Of a stretch of DNA of 64,000 nucleotides, positions 4,213 to 47,420 are shown in pieces (within the stretch, counting starts at the first letter, position 1; every line of letters begins with the position of its first letter). The notes beneath the pieces are model-generated. The model worked only from the letters and a program-made list of their open reading frames with translations, was not told the origin of the DNA and did no database searches. Both the position numbers and the translations under genes were made by a program. The stretch comes from Camelus ferus (Eukaryota): positions 120,962,001 through 121,026,000 of the forward strand of contig NC_045696.1 of assembly GCF_009834535.1 (NCBI RefSeq), read 5' to 3'.

Positions 4213-4780
4213 TTTTTTTTAACATTTTTTATTGATTTATAATCATTTTACAATGTGTCAAATTCCAGTGTTCAGCTCAATTTTTCAGTCATTCGTGGAC
4301 ATATACACACTCATTGTCACATTTTTTTCTCTGTGAGTTATCATAACATTTTGTTTATATTTCCCTGTTCTATACAGTGTAATCTTGTTTATCTATTCTA
4401 CAATTTTGAAATCCCAGTCTATCCCTTCCCACCCTCCACCCCCCTGGTAACCACAAGTCTGTATTCTCTGTCTGTGAGTCTATTTCTGTCCTGTATTTAT
4501 GCTTTGTTTTTGTTTGTTTGTTTGTTTTTGGTTTTGTTTTTTAGATTCCACATATGAGCGATCTCATATGGTATTTTTCTTTCTCTTTCTGGCTTACTTC
4601 ACTTAGAATGNNNNNNNNNNNNNNNNNNNNNNNNNNNNNNNNNNNNNNNNNNNNNNNNNNNNNNNNNNNNNNNNNNNNNNNNNNNNNNNNNNNNNNNNNN
4701 NNNNNNNNNNNNNNNNNNNNNNNNNNNNNNNNNNNNNNNNNNNNNNNNNNNNNNNNNNNNNNNNNNNNNNNNNNNNNNNT
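4213..4780 (-). mobile_element. Young L1-derived 3' end (tail type 2); partly N-masked
   Basis: Poly-T then aacatttttttattgatttataatcattttacaatgtgtcaaattccagtgttcagc, the reverse complement of the 61603-61760 and ~46370-46490 tails. Confidence 0.85.
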
Positions 4781-16449: not shown

Positions 16450-17540
16450 TTGGGAAGAAAAGATAGTCTCTTCAATAAGTGGTGCTGGGGAAAGTGGACA
16501 GCTCCCTGTAAAAGACTGAAACCAGAACATTCCCTAACACTATATACAAAAATAAACTCAAGTGGATTAAACACCTAAATGTAAGACAAGACACTATAAA
16601 ACTCATAGAAGAAAACATAGGCAAAACACTCTTTGACATGCATTGCCCCTGTATTTTTTGGATCCATCTCCNNNNNNNNNNNNNNNNNNNNNNNNNNNNN
16701 NNNNNNNNNNNNNNNNNNNNNNNNNNNNNNNNNNNNNNNNNNNNNNNNNNNNNNNNNNNNNNNNNNNNNNNNNNNNNNNNNNNNNNNNNNNNNNNNNNNN
16801 NNNNNNNNNNNNNNNGGGATTAATTTCCAAAATATACAAGCAGTTCACACAGCTTGATATCAAAAAGAACAAACAACCCAATCAAAAAATGGGCAGAAGA
16901 CCTAAATAGACACTTCTGTGAGGAAGACATGCAGATGGACCACAGGCACGAGAAAATAAGCTCAACATCACTACTTATCAGAGAAACACAAATCACACCT
17001 GCAATGAGGTGTCACCTCACACCAGTCAGAATGGCCACCATCAAAAAGTCNNNNNNNNNNNNNNNNNNNNNNNNNNNNNNNNNNNNNNNNNNNNNNNNNN
17101 NNNNNNNNNNNNNNNNNNNNNNNNNNNNNNNNNNNNNNNNNNNNNNNNNNNNNNNNNNNNNNNNNNNNNNNNNNNNNNNNNNNNNNNNNNNNNNNNNNNN
17201 NNNNNNNNNNNNNNNNNNNNNNNAACCCCAATTCGAAAAGATACATGCACCCCAATGTTCACAGCAGCACTATATACAATAGCCAAGACATGGAAACAAC
17301 CTAAAAGTCCATTGACAGATGGCTGGATAAAGAAGCTGTGGTATATTTATACAATGGGATACTACTCAGCCATAAAAAAAAAATAAAATAATGCCACTTG
17401 CAGTGACGTGGATGGACCTGGAGATTGTCATTCTAAGTGAAGTAAGCCAGAAAGAGAAAGAAAAATACCATATGATATCACATTTATGTGGAATCTAAAG
17501 AAAAAAAAAGACAAATTTATTTACAACACAGAAACAAAAA
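16450..17540 (+). mobile_element. L1 ORF2 3' fragment with truncated 3' UTR; two N blocks
   Basis: ORF2 C-terminal motifs [62 protein letters not shown]. Confidence 0.9.
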
Positions 17541-26705: not shown

Positions 26706-27846
26706 ACATATCAATCTCTTACTGAAAAAATATGTCAAAGCCAGTTGCAATATTTTCTCAAGTTCCACTTAAAACCTTTGAAATTGGGGGTGAGATAATA
26801 TTTCAGTTTTTAACCACTCCAGAGACCTGATTATAGTTTACAAGCACCTTCACTGTATGAATTAAATATGATTTGGAATACAGTACTTTTATTTGCTGTA
26901 GTTTTTGTATTTGTGGGAAATACAAAATCACTCAGGCTGGTTAGTTCCCCCTGTCAAATCATGGTCTTAATTACGTCCATCTGGGCCAATTAGTTTAGCA
27001 CCAAGGAAAATCATCTTTGTCAAGACTCCCAGAACCAAAGCCAAGTCTCTGCAGACCTGTGTTCGTTCCTGTTCATGGGTCGGAGGTGCCATGGTTATTC
27101 CCAGAAGCAGAACCTGGGACTAAGTTCTTGCTTCAAAAGATGCTCTTTTGCCAGCCATCCTGAGCCTAAAATGTCCAGCTCTTTTCTCTAAATACATTAT
27201 AAATGTAAATGTATTTTGTGCCAAGGAGATAATAAGGCAGAAATATACATTAGTGTTTCCACTCTAGTCTCACCTGGGATTTGGGCCAAACTCTGTAGAT
27301 TAAACCAAAGAGCTTGGTAGGCATGACTATGACTTTTGCAGTGGAAACATTCAGGTGGTGCATGCAGTTACTTTAATAGAACTCTGCTCTGGGTTTGTAA
27401 TGAAATCAGGGAGTTTTTCTAAATCACAGGGATTGATTCTGTACTCTACCCTGCAGGCTGTATGTGCAGTGACTGCCTGGTTTTGGACAAGTTGCTCTGA
27501 ATTCTTCCTGTTATTTTCTCCTTTAGTCCGAATATGAACGCATTTCAGCAGGCTGCTGTGCCACAGCAGAGATTCCCGGGATAGGGGAGAGTCTGCTCAT
27601 CTCACATCAGTGAACGAGCCCGCCTCCCTCAGGCTGTGCCTGGAGTTAGAATATCCAGATACGACTCTGTGCATGGCCAAGTCATTTGATTCTTACTACA
27701 AATCTGCTGAGCCAAGCAGGCCATATTTATCTTCAAGGAGGGCGTGNNNNNNNNNNNNNNNNNNNNNNNNNNNNNNNNNNNNNNNNNNNNNNNNNNNNNN
27801 NNNNNNNNNNNNNNNNNNNNNNNNNNNNNNNNNNNNNNNNNNNNNN

Positions 27847-39514: not shown

Positions 39515-42081
39515 GTGTCAAGGGTCCCTCAGGGCTGCTGGAGAGGGCCTGGGTGGAGCCAGTGGACTGCAAGGTGGGTGGGCAGAGAAGAGGGTGGGAG
39601 GTGCCCATGGTCCCTCAGCCTGGCAGCAGGGGAGCAGAGGGAGGAGCCATTCCTCATCACCCATTTGAGTTGGGTACTACGTGGATTTTTGAGAAGCAAT
39701 TCTATTTAAAATACCATTAGAAATGTTAACCTGGTGTCTATTTGTGATTGTCTAATATTTATTATCTTCCTGATGTTGAGCATTACAGACAGGCAAAACT
39801 ACACTATGTTAAATGTCAGTAACTCACATTTGTTGGGTACATACCACGTGCACAGCACTCAGCATCCTTTGTACTCTGTAATGGTCACAGCAGTCCTGTG
39901 GGATTGGTACTGTCATCCCCATTTTATAGATGAGAAAACTGACATGCAGAAAGTTTAAATAACACCTCATGTTTTGAAGCTGATGTTAAGAGTCTTGATT
40001 TAAATGCAGGTCTTTTTGATGCCAAAGCCAGCATTCTAAACCAGTGTTTTTCTTATTGGGAGCTAAGAAATCAGTATAGCAAGTGGCAACTCGGTTTTAA
40101 AAAAAATAGAATGCAAAATACCAGAGCGTGTCATACATAGGATGGGCAAATCTCGACGCATGAAACTTTTGTTTCAACTACAAAGATACTTATATATGTA
40201 CACAAATGCAAGCACATTTCTGTGGACTGGGCAACAGTGGAAATGATATTTCTTACTCTGTCATAGTCAAATTTGAAAGCAGATATTCTTGCCTGAAGGT
40301 GGGGTGTAGAGAGAAAGAGGGAGGAAATACGAGAGAGTCAATGAATGACTGACTGTCAAGAACCTGGAGAGACTCAGGGAGAGTCGCAGGGGAGGCAGGA
40401 GAGGCAGGAAGGCAGGTGGCTCCATCCACCCAGCACTCAGCAAGCACGCGCCCCTACTTGAGGGCAAAACTGAAGACCTGAGTGTCCTCTGGGCAGACTT
40501 CGGCTTTTACATGCTTCTCTTGCCGCGATCCTTTTGTCACACTGAGTGGGAGTCAAATAAAGATTTTCATAAAACATGGCCCCCGTATACAAGTAATATA
40601 TTCTATCTGGTGCTCAACTGAAATTAGCTGATCTGAAGGGAAAGCAGGCTGGATTGGAGTCACCAGGAGAAACTGCGAGATCCCCAGTGAGCCCCTCTCA
40701 AGGGATTGGCAAGGGCAGGTGTGAGTATGTGTGATTGTGTCTTTTGAACTGACCAGTTTTGATGCCATGGCACTTCCTCTTGTGTTACAGATAGCAGGGG
40801 ATTTCTACATCCACTAAATATTTCATTTTTCAAGGGATTCTGGATTCCTTGAATGAAAAGTCCATTTTTACAGATGTGGAAACTGAGTGAACATTTGTAT
40901 AAAGTTTCCCTGCATACGGATGCTTTTGTAAGAATCACACGATTGAATCTCCTTGGCTACCCTGTTAGGCTCTCCTTAGGTCAGCTTCACTGGAGAAGTT
41001 AGAGCTCAGCAAGTTCAAAGCCCTCACCTGAGTTTCTCATCGAACAAGTGGCAGAGCTAGATTCAGACTTCCCTTCTCTGACCCCAAATTCCGTATTTTC
41101 CCCACTAGACATAAAGTAGCAACAATGGGATGAACAACAGTGCTCTGTGTTATAATTTAGAAGAATAATTTTGTTTATAAGTCAGAGTATGGTGCAAAGC
41201 CTAAAATGTCCACGGTTTTAAGGAGGTGGGCGTCATTATGTAATTTCCTCCCCTCCTCCAGAAGCTTTCTCTGCTCCGAGGCCCCCGTCTGCAAACTGGA
41301 AGGGATATCACTGTGCTTTTTTGTGATCCATCCTTGGCCTTTGTTGGTTGAAGACAATTACAAGCACCAGTTATATTTTTCGTTACTAATAATATTGCAT
41401 CAGGTAACTTAGGTAGCCACTTCTTGGCATCAGCTTAACTTGGTGGCCTTTTCCTTTTGTTTGTTTGTTTCTTTAAATAAATGCTGTGTATTGATGTGAG
41501 TAAAGAGGGCCCCAGAGTGAACTACATCTCCAAAGCCTCCGTAGCCTGTTAGAGAATGACAGCGTTTTCCTCAGTTTGCCAAAATGCTGTTACTATGTAT
41601 TTGCCTGTTCTCCCCAGTAATATTTTCTTTAAAAAAAAAAAAAAAAAAAAACCCGGGAATAGTGCTGACATAACTGTGTCTGCAAAAACTTCATGTGGGT
41701 ATGAAAGAGGGTCCTGCAGCCAAGGCATCCTACCCTGCTTGTGCTCCCAAACCCCCTCATTTGTAATGAGGATTCATGCCTTTGAGTGTAAAGACTTTGA
41801 AAGAAGACATTTCTTCTTGTTTAATGGTTTAATTCTTCCACTTTCAAAATGTGGTTTCAAATAGAGTCATCCCCCCTTTCCTCCACTGGTTTACTGAGTT
41901 TGCTGAGTCTTTATTCCATTCAACTAGATGCGTTCAGAAACCAGAGATCCAGCTCCACACTCCATGAGACCTTTGTCAGTGCAAACAAGACACACATCTC
42001 TGGGAGAACATGGAGGACTTCTAGACTCATGATAGTTTTCATGACTGGTGGGACCTGGTTCTTGTTTATTCTTTATTTCAG

Positions 42082-42243
42082 AGATCCCAGAAGACCCACT
42101 TGTGGCCGAAGAGTATTACGCTGATGCCTTTGACTCCTGTTCTGAAGAAAGTGAGGAAGAGGAAGAAAATACAGTGTTCTCGGCAGGGGGAGGAAGAGGT
42201 CAAGGATGAGGAACCCCAGCCTGCGTACAGGACAAACCAACAG
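42082..42243 (+). CDS. NEK11: NEK11 coding exon (162 nt as assembled, 161 expected): (E)IPEDPLVAEEYYADAFDSCSEESEEEEENTVFSAG [+1 G] EEEVKDEEPQPAYRTNQQ
   Basis: Acceptor ctttatttcag|AG and donor CAG|gtacgt. The two halves match NEK11 in different frames, separated by a 5-G run at 42186-42190 (see findings). Confidence 0.93.
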
Positions 42244-43709: not shown

Positions 43710-44722
43710 ATGCAACTGACAGGGGCTTAATTTCTGGATATATCAATAGCTCATACAGCTCAGTAACAAAAAACCAAATAGCCCAAAAATGGGCAGAAGA
43801 CCTAAACAAGCATTTCTCCAATAAAGATATACAGATGGCAAATTGGCACATGAAAAAATGCTTGCTATCACTAATTATCAGAGAAATGCAAATCAAAACT
43901 ACAATGAGGTATCACCTCACACCAGTCAGAATGGCCATCATTCANNNNNNNNNNNNNNNNNNNNNNNNNNNNNNNNNNNNNNNNNNNNNNNNNNNNNNNN
44001 NNNNNNNNNNNNNNNNNNNNNNNNNNNNNNNNNNNNNNNNNNNNNNNNNNNNNNNNNNNNNNNNNNNNNNNNNNNNNNNNNNNNNNNNNNNNNNNNNNNN
44101 NNNNNNNNNNNNNNNNNNNNNNNNNNNNNNNATTCAAAGAGATTCATGCACCCCAATGTTCATANNNNNNNNNNNNNNNNNNNNNNNNNNNNNNNNNNNN
44201 NNNNNNNNNNNNNNNNNNNNNNNNNNNNNNNNNNNNNNNNNNNNNNNNNNNNNNNNNNNNNNNNNNNNNNNNNNNNNNNNNNNNNNNNNNNNNNNNNNNN
44301 NNNNNNNNNNNNNNNNNNNNNNNNNNNNNNNNNNNNNNNNNNNNNNNNNNNNNNNNNNNNNNNNNNNNNNNNTGATATCACCCATATGTGGAATCTTTAA
44401 AAAAAAAAAAAAGACACAAATGAACTTATGCACAAAACAGAAAAAGAACCACAGACATAGAACACAAACTTATGGTTACCAGGCCGGGAAGGGGGTAGGA
44501 AGGGATAAATTGGGAGTTGGGATTTGCAGATACTAACTACTATATATAAAATAGATAACAAGAGCCTACTGTATAGCACAGGGAACTATATCCAATATCT
44601 TATAGTAACCTATAATGAAAAAGAATATGAAAAGTTATATGCATATATATATAAATGAATCATTGTGCTGTACACCAGAAGTTAACACAACATTGTAAGT
44701 CAACTATACTTCAATTTAAAAA
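43710..44722 (+). mobile_element. Young 5'-truncated L1 (tail type 1) inserted in an old L1; two N blocks
   Basis: ORF2 motifs [13 protein letters not shown] and [17 protein letters not shown]. The 3' UTR ends caactatacttcaatttaaaaa. Candidate TSD agaacttt at 43648-43655 and 44723-44730. Confidence 0.9.
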
Positions 44723-45027
44723 AGAACTTTCACAAATATCAACAAAAAGACAACCTAGTTTTTCAAATGGAGAGGGACTTGAACAGCCCCCTCTCCAGAC
44801 AAGACATACAAATGGTCAACAAGCACATAGGAAGATGTGTACCAAGAAGAAAGAAACCCACAAGATGGAATTTCGTCAGAGGAAAGCACAGCCACCCACG
44901 GAAAGAGCTGTCAATGGCCAAAGCAGGACTGAACTGAGCAACCAAAGCCTGTACTGATGGATTATAACCAAAGCTTAAAGTCACTGTCCAGGTGGGGTGT
45001 CCACACTGGTAAAAATCAGTGATTACA

Positions 45028-46882
45028 TAATACAGAGGAATGAGTAAGTGACCTAGAAAACAGGACAACAGAAAGCACCCAATCAGAACAGCTGAGAGAA
45101 AAACAAATAAAAAACAATGAAAACAATATAAGGGACCTAAGGGATAATATAAAGCATGCCAATCTATGCATAATAGGGGTTCCAGAAGGGGAAGAAAGAG
45201 CAAAGATGATTGAAAAAGTATTGGAAGAAATCATGACTGAAAACTTCCCAAAACTAAAGGAATCAGATATCGAAGTACAGGAGGCTCAGAGGGTCCCAAA
45301 AAGGAAGAACCCAAACAGACCCACACTAAGACATATCACAATCAAGATGACCAGAGTCAAGGATAAAGAAATAATCCTAAAGGCAGCAAGAGAAAAACAA
45401 AGAGTGAGTTACAAGGGGACCCCCCATAAGGCTCTCAGCTGATTTCTCTACACAAGCACTACAGGCCAGAAGGGAGTAGCAAGATATATTCAAAGTCCTG
45501 AATGAAAAAAAGATGCAGCCTAGGATACTCTATCCAGCAAGGCTATCCTTTAGAATAGGATGAGAGATAAAGAACTTCACAGACAAGCAAAAACTAAAAG
45601 AGTTTAGCCACACTAAACCCATGCTAAAAGAAATATTGACAGGTCTACTCTAAATAGAAAAGAAGCAGGATGCTACAAAAATGATAAACTCATAACTGGA
45701 AAGGAGATAACTGCCATGAATTACGAAAAGAATAAACACAAAATTGTAAAAGAAGACATCTAAATCATTAAGAGTGGGAGAGGGAAGCAAGGAAAACCAC
45801 TGTGGAAAACAGTATGGAGATTCCTCAAAAGACTAGGAATAGACTTACCATATGACCCAGCAATCCCACTCCTGGGCATATATCCAGAAGGAACCCTACT
45901 TCAGGANNNNNNNNNNNNNNNNNNNNNNNNNNNNNNNNNNNNNNNNNNNNNNNNNNNNNNNNNNNNNNNNNNNNNNNNNNNNNNNNNNNNNNNNNNNNNN
46001 NNNNNNNNNNNNNNNNNNNNNNNNNNNNNNNNNNNNNNNNNNNNNNNNNNNNNNNNNNNNCCATTTGCAGCAACATGTATGTTCCTGGAGAATGTCATTC
46101 CAAGTGAAGTAAGCCAGAAAGAGAAAGAAAAATACCATATGAGATTGTTTATATGAGAAATCTGAAAGCAAAACAAAACAAAACAAAACAAAACATAAAT
46201 ACAAAACAGAAACAGACTCACAGACATAGAATACAAACTTGTGGTTGCCAAGGGGGCGGGGGGTGGGAAGGGACAGACTGAGATTTTAAAATGCAGAATA
46301 GATAAACAAGATTATACTGTATAGCACAGGGAAATATATACAAGATCTTGTGGTAGCTCATAGAGGAAAAAAAATGTGACAATGAATATATGTATGTTCA
46401 TGTATGACTGAAAAATTGTGCTCTACACTAGAATTTGACACAACATTGTAAAATAACTATTACTCAATAAAAAAATGTAAAATAAAAAAATATTTGATAA
46501 AGGAAAAACTCTAACAGTATCAATTTCTCCCTAGTAGGCAGCCATTCTCTGGAATATATTGGCGTCACAACTCAGTTGATCCTTAATTTTAGATAATCTC
46601 ATAAATTATTTTTTGTGATTTTTCTACTATATTACCCATCCCCAGCAGTGTATTTCAAAGGATCTTACTTTGATGAAAAGAAAAAAAAGATTTGTAAGGC
46701 ATAAGTTAGTACTTCTGTCAAGTTTTTTGAGTTATATATCATCTTGAAGATCTTAAAAATCTATACCCTCTAAATGTTCCATGACCATGTTTATCTTGCC
46801 TGGGCTCTGTCTGACTGAAGATACTTTGCTGAATAGCCAAGCTATAAACCACATTTCATTAAATTTAAGATACTAAAAAAAA
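45028..46882 (+). mobile_element. TSD-bounded L1-derived insertion: 5'-truncated ORF1, spacer, last ~100 codons of ORF2, type-2 3' UTR, then a 3' transduction
   Basis: 17-bp TSD aaaaatcagtgattaca (45011-45027 and 46883-46899). ORF1 motifs IIGVPEGEER, EIMTENFPKL, VQEAQRVP, ILKAAREKQ; ORF1 stop at 45651-45653. ORF2 C-terminal ccactgtggaaaacagtatggag starts at 45797. Two A-tails (~46471-46490 and 46875-46887). Confidence 0.9.
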
Positions 46883-47189
46883 AAAAATCAGTGATTACAC
46901 AGTGTGAAAAAAAAACAGCAACAAAGTTTAAAAGGTTCACCAGAGAGCAAGAGGAAATAGGGATGTGAGCCAAGTAGTGATTTTCCTCCGAGCTGGTAAA
47001 TGTGACTGGGACCTATGGACGTTTCAGGTTCTCTCTCTAGGCCTACTCCATGTTTTTTGTGTGGTTTATTTTTCCTTCCTGGTTTACTTTTCCCCCCTTT
47101 GAATTGTGTTAAATTTAGAGTTTCTTTAGGATTAAAATAAACCACATGAAAGTTCTCGGTGTGGGGAAGGAAAAAAAAAAAAGAACATA

Positions 47190-47420
47190 GGGTTGGAAAT
47201 CAAGCCACCTGCATGAGTCTAGCCCTTGTCCCTGGCAGGCTGTGGGACCTTGTGCAAGCTACTAAATCCCACTGTGCTTCAGTTTTCTAAACTGTAAAAT
47301 AGGAGGATAATGGTTCCTACCTCACAGAATACTTTTGGGGATTGAATGAAGTAATCAATATAAAGTCCTGAGAATAGTGCCCAGTATTTAATAAAGTAAT
47401 TAGTAATGAGATATTAGCTG
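47190..47420 (+). mobile_element. MIR
   Basis: tgtgggaccttgtgcaagctactaaatcccactgtgcttcagttttctaaactgtaaaataggaggataat...cctacctcacag. Confidence 0.75.

What the first reader, a model, noticed from the sequence alone, without database searches (positions are those of the whole stretch)
45011..46899. L1-mediated 3' transduction: 384 bp of foreign DNA with its own ATTAAA and poly(A), inside a 17-bp TSD
Seen: aaaaatcagtgattaca occurs at 45011-45027 and 46883-46899. Between the copies lie the L1-derived body, a first AATAAA/A-tail (46466-46490), an AT-rich segment I cannot assign to a repeat (46491-46874), ATTAAA at 46858-46863, and a second poly(A) starting 12 nt later (46875) that runs into the TSD. 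Established: this is the signature of read-through past the L1 poly(A) signal with co-mobilisation of source-locus flank. Inference: the 384 bp tags an active camelid source element elsewhere and may define a sibling set.
Basis: partly seen in the sequence, partly recalled or inferred. Interest (0 to 1): 0.72.

Follow-up and report, generated by a model that had tools for sequence, protein, structure and literature searches.

The report
Broken L1 copy carrying extra flank
A defective L1 jumping gene in a camelid intron was copied in together with 384 bases of non-L1 sequence, which is a well-known and ordinary by-product of L1 activity; I could not find where the extra bases came from.

Summary
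An exact 17-bp repeat (45011-45027 and 46883-46899) encloses four things in order. They are an L1 body, the L1's own AATAAA and short A-tract, 384 bp of non-repeat DNA with one ATTAAA 17 nt before its end, and a pure A13 tail. The target reads TTTTT/A on the bottom strand. This is one L1-machinery (TPRT) insertion of a composite RNA, and L1 3' transduction is the best reading (about 0.6).

1. No second copy was seen. In contig sets of four runs from three closely related organisms, 46586-46869 is covered by one contig at single-copy depth at 90% likeness or more. No donor or sibling appeared, but the tool warns that holes prove nothing.
2. No empty site was seen. All three organisms carry the filled site, so the insertion is old and fixed.
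3. The source is not shown to be active. The L1 starts inside ORF1 and lacks ORF2 up to about residue 1150, so its RNA may have needed proteins supplied in trans.

The N run sits inside colinear L1 ORF2 sequence, and its nominal length keeps the frame.

The scan noted other putative 3' transductions in this genome on other DNA (s1-149187, s1-149556). This is an ordinary member of a known kind, of low interest.

The parts
45011..45027 (+). 5' copy of the target-site duplication. The nick site on the bottom strand reads 5'-gattttt/accag-3', which is the L1 endonuclease type TTTT/A.
45028..45650 (+). L1 ORF1 remnant, truncated at the 5' end inside the coiled coil (about human ORF1p residue 120). 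It holds the RRM and C-terminal domain and is broken by stops and frameshifts.
   Evidence: PF02994 E 5.8e-21; PF17490 on two pieces; PDB 2yko ORF1p, E 1e-25
45651..45793 (+). Sequence after the ORF1 stop, probably the inter-ORF spacer. It ends at an internal deletion breakpoint at about 45785-45796.
   Evidence: Identification as spacer is inference; no reference copy exists in the window.
45794..45906 (+). L1 ORF2 C-terminal piece, starting at about human ORF2p residue 1150. Endonuclease, reverse transcriptase and most of the C-terminal domain (about 3.4 kb) are absent.
   Evidence: ORF2p chains 8uw3/8sxt/9k6g, E 3e-11, residues 1150-1182
45907..46060 (.). N run of 154, left unfilled. It lies inside colinear L1 ORF2 sequence, and its nominal length keeps the reading frame.
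46061..46156 (+). Last 31 codons of L1 ORF2 and the stop codon.
   Evidence: DNA matches to other L1 3' ends in the window
46157..46478 (+). L1 3' UTR with AATAAA at 46466. Two related copies in the window end the same way (...TCAATAAAAAATGTAAAA).
   Evidence: Pile-up of 10^5-10^6 word depth.
46479..46490 (+). Internal short A-tract (AAAATAAAAAAA), interrupted by one T. It contains a second AATAAA at 46481.
46491..46874 (+). 384 bp of non-L1, non-repeat, non-coding DNA, co-mobilised with the L1.
   Evidence: Single-copy depth in four contig sets.
46858..46863 (+). ATTAAA, the only canonical poly(A) hexamer in the 384 bp. It starts 17 nt before the tail.
   Evidence: 6.4% of shuffles place a hexamer 10-35 nt before the end
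46875..46887 (+). Terminal poly(A) of 13 pure A. The last five could equally belong to the TSD.
46883..46899 (+). 3' copy of the target-site duplication. One contig bridges the tail, this repeat and the flank in each of four runs.

Best explanation
This is a single target-primed reverse transcription event made by L1 proteins. The template was a transcript that ran from an L1 through that element's own weak poly(A) signals and genomic A-tract into the DNA downstream of it. The transcript was cleaved 11 nt after the first canonical hexamer it met (ATTAAA) and then polyadenylated. L1 endonuclease nicked the bottom strand at TTTTT/A, the A-tail annealed there, and reverse transcription copied the 384 nt of flank first and the L1 next. 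The copy ends inside ORF1, and a staggered second nick gave the 17-bp duplication. That makes it an L1 3' transduction.

What is shown: the anatomy, the TSD, the target site, the hexamer spacing, and the presence of the insertion in three related organisms.

What is inferred: that the 384 nt lay directly downstream of the source L1, since no donor was found. It is also unknown when the loss of nearly all of ORF2 happened. It could have been in the source, in the RNA (for example by splicing), during reverse transcription, or later in the genome. If the RNA already lacked ORF2, the proteins came in trans from another L1.
For: - The exact 17-bp repeat is found only at the two ends.
- The bottom strand at the 5' end of the repeat reads gattttt/accag.
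- The L1 identity of the body is shown by the ORF1 RRM and C-terminal domain and by ORF2p residues 1150-1182.
- The L1 part ends exactly where two related copies end, followed by a short A-tract interrupted by a T. That fits an aged genomic A-tail at a source better than a fresh RNA tail.
- The 384 bp is not L1, not a repeat in the window, not a known RNA family and has no ORF over 37 aa.
- Its only canonical hexamer starts 17 nt before a pure A13 tail, a placement seen in 6.4% of shuffles.
- One contig runs from the 384 bp through the tail and repeat into the flank in each of four runs. The structure is therefore real DNA in three organisms and not an assembly artefact.
- Transductions are common: about 25% of L1 insertions carry one according to the abstract of PMC13009371.
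Against: - The defining proof is missing: a donor locus with the 384 bp directly 3' of an L1. In four contig sets from three organisms, 46586-46869 is covered by one contig at single-copy depth, and no other piece at 90% likeness or more was laid. A retained donor flank should be roughly 92-96% alike, given that the L1 part differs from its family majority at about 6 of 250 positions.
- The element lacks nearly all of ORF2. If that was already true of the RNA, cis-preference cannot have favoured it, and an L1-promoted read-through transcript is no more likely than any other transcript containing this L1 fragment.
- The 5' truncation removes any evidence on where transcription began.
Confidence: 0.6

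Rival explanations
1. This is a processed retrocopy of the 3' end of a host transcript (mRNA, lncRNA or intronic read-through) that happened to contain an old, already deleted L1 fragment in sense orientation. The transcript was not started from the L1 promoter. L1 proteins copied it in trans like any processed pseudogene, and the copy was 5'-truncated at 1.85 kb.
For: - The L1 part cannot encode ORF2p, so trans mobilisation may have been needed anyway.
- The internal A-tract is short and interrupted, as in an old embedded fragment.
- Polyadenylation used a normal hexamer at normal spacing.
- The anatomy is identical to that of a transduction.
Against: - No donor locus was found either.
- Trans mobilisation is much less efficient than cis mobilisation of L1 RNA (established knowledge).
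- The ORF2 loss may postdate the insertion.
Confidence: 0.2
2. This is a template-switch chimera. Reverse transcription began on the poly(A) tail of an unrelated cellular RNA, copied its last 384 nt, then jumped to the 3' end of an L1 RNA and went on. The result is a bipartite insertion inside one TSD, as in the U6-L1 and mRNA-L1 chimeric retrogenes described by Buzdin and colleagues (my knowledge).
For: The same TPRT hallmarks apply. There is an A-tract at the junction between the two parts. The 384 nt ends like a bona fide mRNA 3' end.
Against: - Known chimeras usually have a small RNA as the 5' part and L1 or Alu as the 3' part, which is the reverse of this arrangement (my knowledge).
- A jump onto an L1 RNA tail should leave a fresh, pure A run. 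The junction here has only 12 nt with an interruption.
- Such chimeras are far rarer than 3' transduction.
Confidence: 0.12
3. This is not a single insertion. Either the 17-bp repeat is a coincidence or the arrangement is an assembly artefact (a misjoin at the N run or collapsed L1 copies), and the 384 bp is native intron sequence.
For: An N run lies inside the element. The 384 bp is single-copy, as native sequence would be.
Against: - A 17-bp exact repeat is not expected by chance, and it sits exactly at the L1 5' end and at the end of a poly(A).
- Independent contigs from four runs bridge the 384 bp, tail, repeat and flank.
- Both sides of the N run are colinear, in-frame L1.
- The L1 has no TSD of its own at 46491.
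Confidence: 0.03

Closest known systems
L1 3' transduction (Moran et al. 1999; Goodier et al. 2000; Pickeral et al. 2000, from my knowledge; used to trace source elements in PMC7058536 and PMC13009371)
   Same: It has an L1 3' end with a bypassed poly(A) signal and internal A-tract, and a unique downstream segment of a few hundred bp. That segment ends at its own hexamer plus poly(A). One TSD encloses everything, and the target is TTTT/A.
   Different: No donor locus or sibling was found at 90% likeness or more in three related organisms. The L1 part lacks almost all of ORF2. The insertion is old and fixed, so it does not mark a currently active source.
Processed pseudogenes / retrocopies made in trans by L1
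   Same: A poly(A) tail follows a normal hexamer, with TSD, 5' truncation and an endonuclease-type target. The template is probably unable to encode ORF2p.
   Different: Most of the copied RNA is L1 sequence, and no parent gene is known.
Chimeric retrogenes made by template switching (Buzdin et al. 2002-2003, my knowledge)
   Same: Two unrelated RNA-derived parts sit inside one TSD with an A-tract at their junction.
   Different: The order of the parts (L1 at the 5' side, non-L1 at the 3' side) and the degenerate junction A-tract are atypical for that class.
ORF2-less L1 derivatives: HAL1 families (Bao and Jurka 2010) and spliced integrated L1s, SpIREs (Larson et al. 2018), both from my knowledge
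   Same: ORF1 is retained and ORF2 is almost wholly missing. The right-hand breakpoint lies just before ...CCACTGTGG.
   Different: A family (many copies with the same junction) and splice-site use were not tested.

Membership tests
L1 (TPRT) insertion | Target-site duplication of 7-20 bp enclosing the whole insert | tested here: met
   Exact 17-mer at 45011-45027 and 46883-46899, with no other match at 2 mismatches or fewer.
L1 (TPRT) insertion | Poly(A) at the 3' end abutting the TSD, and a TTTT/A-type nick site on the bottom strand | tested here: met
   A13 at 46875-46887; the bottom strand reads gattttt/accag.
L1 (TPRT) insertion | The body is L1 sequence | tested here: met
   PF02994 and PF17490, PDB ORF1p, PDB ORF2p 1150-1182, and 3' UTR matches to other copies.
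L1 3' transduction | The complete L1 3' end, with its own poly(A) signal and A-tract, lies upstream of a non-L1 segment | tested here: met
   The L1 end is defined against two related copies. AATAAA lies at 46466 and 46481. The 384 bp is not L1 and not a repeat.
L1 3' transduction | The non-L1 segment ends at a poly(A) signal followed 10-30 nt later by a second poly(A) | tested here: met
   ATTAAA at 46858-46863 and the tail from 46875. Shuffles give this placement 6.4% of the time.
L1 3' transduction | A donor locus where the same segment lies directly 3' of an L1 | tested here: inconclusive
   No second copy at 90% likeness or more in the contigs of four runs from three organisms. 46586-46869 is one contig at single-copy depth. 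The tool drops human-like contigs, lower identity was not searched, and a contig break at 46840/46869 in three runs is unexplained.
L1 3' transduction | An empty site with one copy of the 17-mer in a species or allele that lacks the insertion | tested here: inconclusive
   All three organisms found carry the filled 3' junction without a branch. More distant outgroups could not be reached.
Chimeric retrogene (template switch) | The 3' part is the 3' end of an independent transcript with no L1 upstream at its own locus | not testable with these tools
   No donor locus is available.
HAL1-like family / spliced L1 (SpIRE) | Many genomic copies share the same ORF1-to-ORF2-end junction, or the junction falls at GT...AG sites of the full-length element | not tested

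The most novel reading that the evidence does not exclude
The 384 nt has no surviving donor in these genomes, so this retro-copy is the only remaining record of a lost locus (or of an RNA not encoded in the present genome). It was carried by an ORF2-less, possibly spliced or HAL1-like, L1 transcript that was mobilised in trans. Such a transcript would be a non-autonomous L1 derivative able to move flanking DNA.
Probability: 0.1. Interest if true: 0.4.

Novelty: new member of a known kind. Interest (0 to 1): 0.2.

Why it matters
It matters little beyond annotation. If the donor were found, the 384 bp would tie this copy to one source element and date that element's activity in camelid ancestry. 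The case is also a clean example of an ORF2-less L1 RNA being mobilised together with flanking DNA. The insert places three sense-strand poly(A) hexamers in an intron of a + strand gene, which could in principle cause premature polyadenylation. Its fixation in three organisms argues that any such effect is tolerated.

Tried and rejected
- **Second copy inside the window.** blastn with word 9, then word 7 with relaxed scoring, and nhmmer all found only the segment itself.
- **Known RNA family.** Rfam at E up to 1 over 44700-47400 gave nothing.
- **Coding content.** No ORF over 37 aa lies within the 384 bp.
- **Exact look-ups of ORFs.** I looked up six ORFs in, across or beside the insert, hoping to fetch other assemblies of the locus or a donor. 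None is on record.
- **Earlier findings by sequence.** The result was blank.
- **Right flank of the N run against solved structures and Pfam.** There was no hit. Its position in ORF2 therefore rests on DNA matches to other L1 ends and on my memory of ORF2p.
- **Mitochondrial or high-copy origin of the 384 bp.** Rejected, because depth is single-copy.
- **The 4-SNP variant path at 46534-46585 as a donor copy.** Considered and judged more likely allelic, because depths add to about 1x in X1 and X2. X7 shows about 2x, so this stays open.
- **Scan of metagenome contigs for host contamination.** Not run, as the chance of success was negligible.

Full report
**Observation.**
- AAAAATCAGTGATTACA occurs at 45011-45027 and 46883-46899 and nowhere else in the window, even with two mismatches allowed. 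Shuffles give 0.03 matches.
- Directly after the first copy an L1-derived body begins.
- AATAAA lies at 46466 and 46481, and a short A-tract ends at 46490.
- 46491-46874 is 384 bp of 32% G+C DNA with one CpG.
- Its only canonical poly(A) hexamer is ATTAAA at 46858-46863.
- Thirteen A follow from 46875 and run into the second copy of the 17-mer.
- The top strand at the first copy reads ctggt/aaaaatc. The bottom strand is therefore gattttt/accag, the TTTT/A type of site that L1 endonuclease nicks (the consensus is established knowledge).

**The N run, tested first.** 45907-46060 is one of nine N runs in the window.
- Left side: 45794-45904 translates to a peptide that aligns to human L1 ORF2p residues 1150-1182, E 3e-11.
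- Right side: 46061 onward matches the ORF2 end and 3' UTR of four other L1 copies in the window. It reads 31 codons to a stop.
- Both sides use the same frame, since 46061-45029 = 1032 = 3 x 344. The nominal 154 N plus the two bases before them make 52 codons.
- By my memory of ORF2p, about 60 residues separate the GIYP and (S/P)F..TWM motifs. Here the count is 58.
- The two sides are therefore colinear pieces of one L1 in one orientation, and nothing suggests a misjoin. Whether the length is exact cannot be known.
- Most N runs in the window (2544, 4611, 17051, 27747, 44165, 45907) lie in or next to L1 ORF2 3' parts. That fits either deliberate masking or short-read gaps in young repeats.

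**What the L1 body is.**
- Start: 45044-45439 carries the ORF1 RNA-binding domain (PF02994, E 5.8e-21; PDB 2yko, E 1e-25, from chain position 17). The copy therefore starts inside the ORF1 coiled coil.
- ORF1 end: 45480-45650 carries the ORF1 C-terminal domain in two pieces split by a stop. Stops and frameshifts interrupt ORF1.
- After the ORF1 stop come about 140 bp with no protein match. The sequence then continues at ORF2p residue about 1150.
- Endonuclease, reverse transcriptase and most of the C-terminal domain, about 3.4 kb, are missing. The breakpoint lies at 45785-45796.
- This agrees with another first-stage note on the same stretch (s1-149571).
- The window cannot show whether the loss was in the source, in the RNA, made during reverse transcription, or happened later. 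No other copy of this part exists in the window.

**Where the L1 ends.** Two related copies in the window end ...TCAATAAAAAATGT(A/T)AAAA... and then pass into their own tails. In the focal copy the same end is followed by AAAATAAAAAAA and then by the 384 bp. The internal A-tract is thus only about 12 nt and is interrupted. That looks like an aged genomic tail transcribed from a source, and not like a fresh RNA tail.

**The 384 bp.**
- It has no relative in the window by sensitive searches, no Rfam match and no ORF above 37 aa.
- One hexamer is about what its composition predicts (0.95 per shuffle). A hexamer starting 10-35 nt before the end occurs in only 6.4% of shuffles.
- The segment therefore ends like a real cleavage and polyadenylation site.

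**Evidence from other genomes.**
- The run index found the 384 bp in three coded organisms: A (share of words 1.00 and 0.85), B (0.73-0.79) and C (0.79). These come from 20 runs in 11 studies, one of which may be the source of the window.
- I laid the contigs of X1 and X2 (A), X8 (B) and X7 (C) on 46200-47400 at 90% likeness. I left the N run and most of the L1 out of the stretch.

Results:
1. One contig bridges the end of the 384 bp, the A13, the 17-mer and the flank in every run (46840-47124, 46828-47122, 46840-47122, 46840-47122). No branch occurs at 46883. The insertion is therefore real DNA, present in all three organisms, and no empty allele was seen.
2. B and C differ from the window by about 0.6% (46623, 46763, +G after 46827, 46911 and others). 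The insertion therefore predates their split.
3. 46586-46869 is covered by a single contig at single-copy depth in each run:

| Run | Depth over 46586-46869 | Depth over flank |
|---|---|---|
| X1 | 8.4 | 11.5-12.5 |
| X8 | 11.7 | 10.7 |
| X7 | 19.8 | 16-17 |
| X2 | 4.9 | 8-9 |

   The bins from 46651 to 46814 hold exactly that depth and nothing else. No second copy at 90% or more was laid, and a piece longer than about 100 nt would have appeared in the table of longest pieces.
4. The L1 part draws 10^5-10^6 of word depth. The focal copy differs from the family majority at about six of 250 positions (46281, 46287, 46294, 46361, 46366, 46406). This suggests a few per cent of decay, so a retained donor flank would be expected at roughly 92-96% likeness.

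**Reading of the negative result.**
- All retro-copy models predict a donor, and even a lost source L1 would leave its flank behind. The missing second copy therefore does not choose between them.
- I do not treat it as a refutation, for three reasons. The tool leaves out contigs that resemble human DNA and says that a hole proves nothing. I set the cut-off at 90%. In X1, X7 and X8 the contigs break at the same place with a 30-letter overlap (46840-46869) and no bubble.
- That break needs another genomic sequence sharing that 30-mer. It could be the only trace of a copy just under the cut-off.
- Two further details are unexplained. A four-SNP variant path at 46534-46585 appears in X1, X2 and X7, with depths adding to about 1x in A but 2x in C. 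A one-base deletion at 46497/8 appears at single-copy depth in all runs.

**Mechanism.**
- The best reading is a classical L1 3' transduction, at about 0.6. In it, transcription reads through the weak L1 signals and is cleaved after the first downstream hexamer. The transcript is then polyadenylated and copied by target-primed reverse transcription at a TTTTT/A nick, which leaves the copy 5'-truncated and flanked by a 17-bp TSD.
- Because the element lacks ORF2, a retrocopy of some other transcript that merely contained this L1 fragment (0.2) gives the same anatomy and cannot be excluded.
- A template-switch chimera is less likely (0.12), because of the order of the parts and the degenerate junction tract.
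- Coincidence or an assembly artefact is very unlikely (0.03).

**Context.**
- An exon with good splice sites lies at 42081-42236 on the + strand. It reads IPEDPLVAEEYYADAFDS..., and another note calls it NEK11 (s1-149439). I did not verify the gene.
- The insert is therefore in sense orientation in the following intron.
- The 5' flank contains an older L1 ORF2 fragment at 44767-44937.

**Comparison and verdict.**
- 3' transduction has been known since 1999. It is used routinely to trace source elements (PMC7058536), and about a quarter of L1 insertions carry one (PMC13009371, abstract).
- The paper on TEs in Camelus only mentions the phenomenon in passing (PMC8605555).
- The scan has noted other candidates in this genome (s1-149187, s1-149556).
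- This is a well-preserved but ordinary member of a known kind. The claim of an active source and a sibling set is not supported. Interest 0.2.

Noticed in passing
window 45785-45796: This is the internal deletion breakpoint of the L1. Sequence after the ORF1 stop joins ORF2 at about residue 1150, just before ...CCACTGTGG. In L1s I recall, a CAG precedes that motif, which would suit a splice acceptor. That is memory, not a test.
   Followed up: partly
window N runs 2544-2672, 4611-4779, 17051-17223, 27747-27846, 44165-44372, 45907-46060: Six of the nine N runs in the window lie in or beside the ORF2 3' part of L1 copies. This suggests purposeful masking of a conserved L1 stretch or short-read gaps in a young repeat, and not random gaps.
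   Followed up: partly
window 46840-46869: Contigs of three runs from three organisms break at the same 30-letter overlap without a bubble, while a fourth run reads through. Some other genomic sequence probably shares this 30-mer. It may be a diverged copy below my 90% cut-off.
   Followed up: no
window 46534-46585: A variant path carries four linked differences (G>C, G>A, G>A, A>G). It is present in both samples of organism A and in organism C but not in B. Depths add to 1x in A and about 2x in C. It is either a shared haplotype or a short paralogue.
   Followed up: partly
window 46497-46498: A contig at single-copy depth lacks one base here in all four runs, including the run that may be the source of the window. 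The window may carry an indel error here, or a second sequence may overlap the junction.
   Followed up: no
window 42081-42236 (+): This is an exon with a cag/AG acceptor and a CAG/gtacgt donor, reading IPEDPLVAEEYYADAFDS... It runs into TGA after the G run at about 42186-42209, as another note says. The L1 insert lies in sense orientation downstream of it.
   Followed up: no
window 44767-44937 and 47143-47224: The 5' flank holds an older L1 ORF2 fragment (...QDIQMVNKHIGRC...). A short stretch of the 3' flank has 10-fold raised contig depth and joints to the L1 part, so it is a repeat fragment.
   Followed up: no
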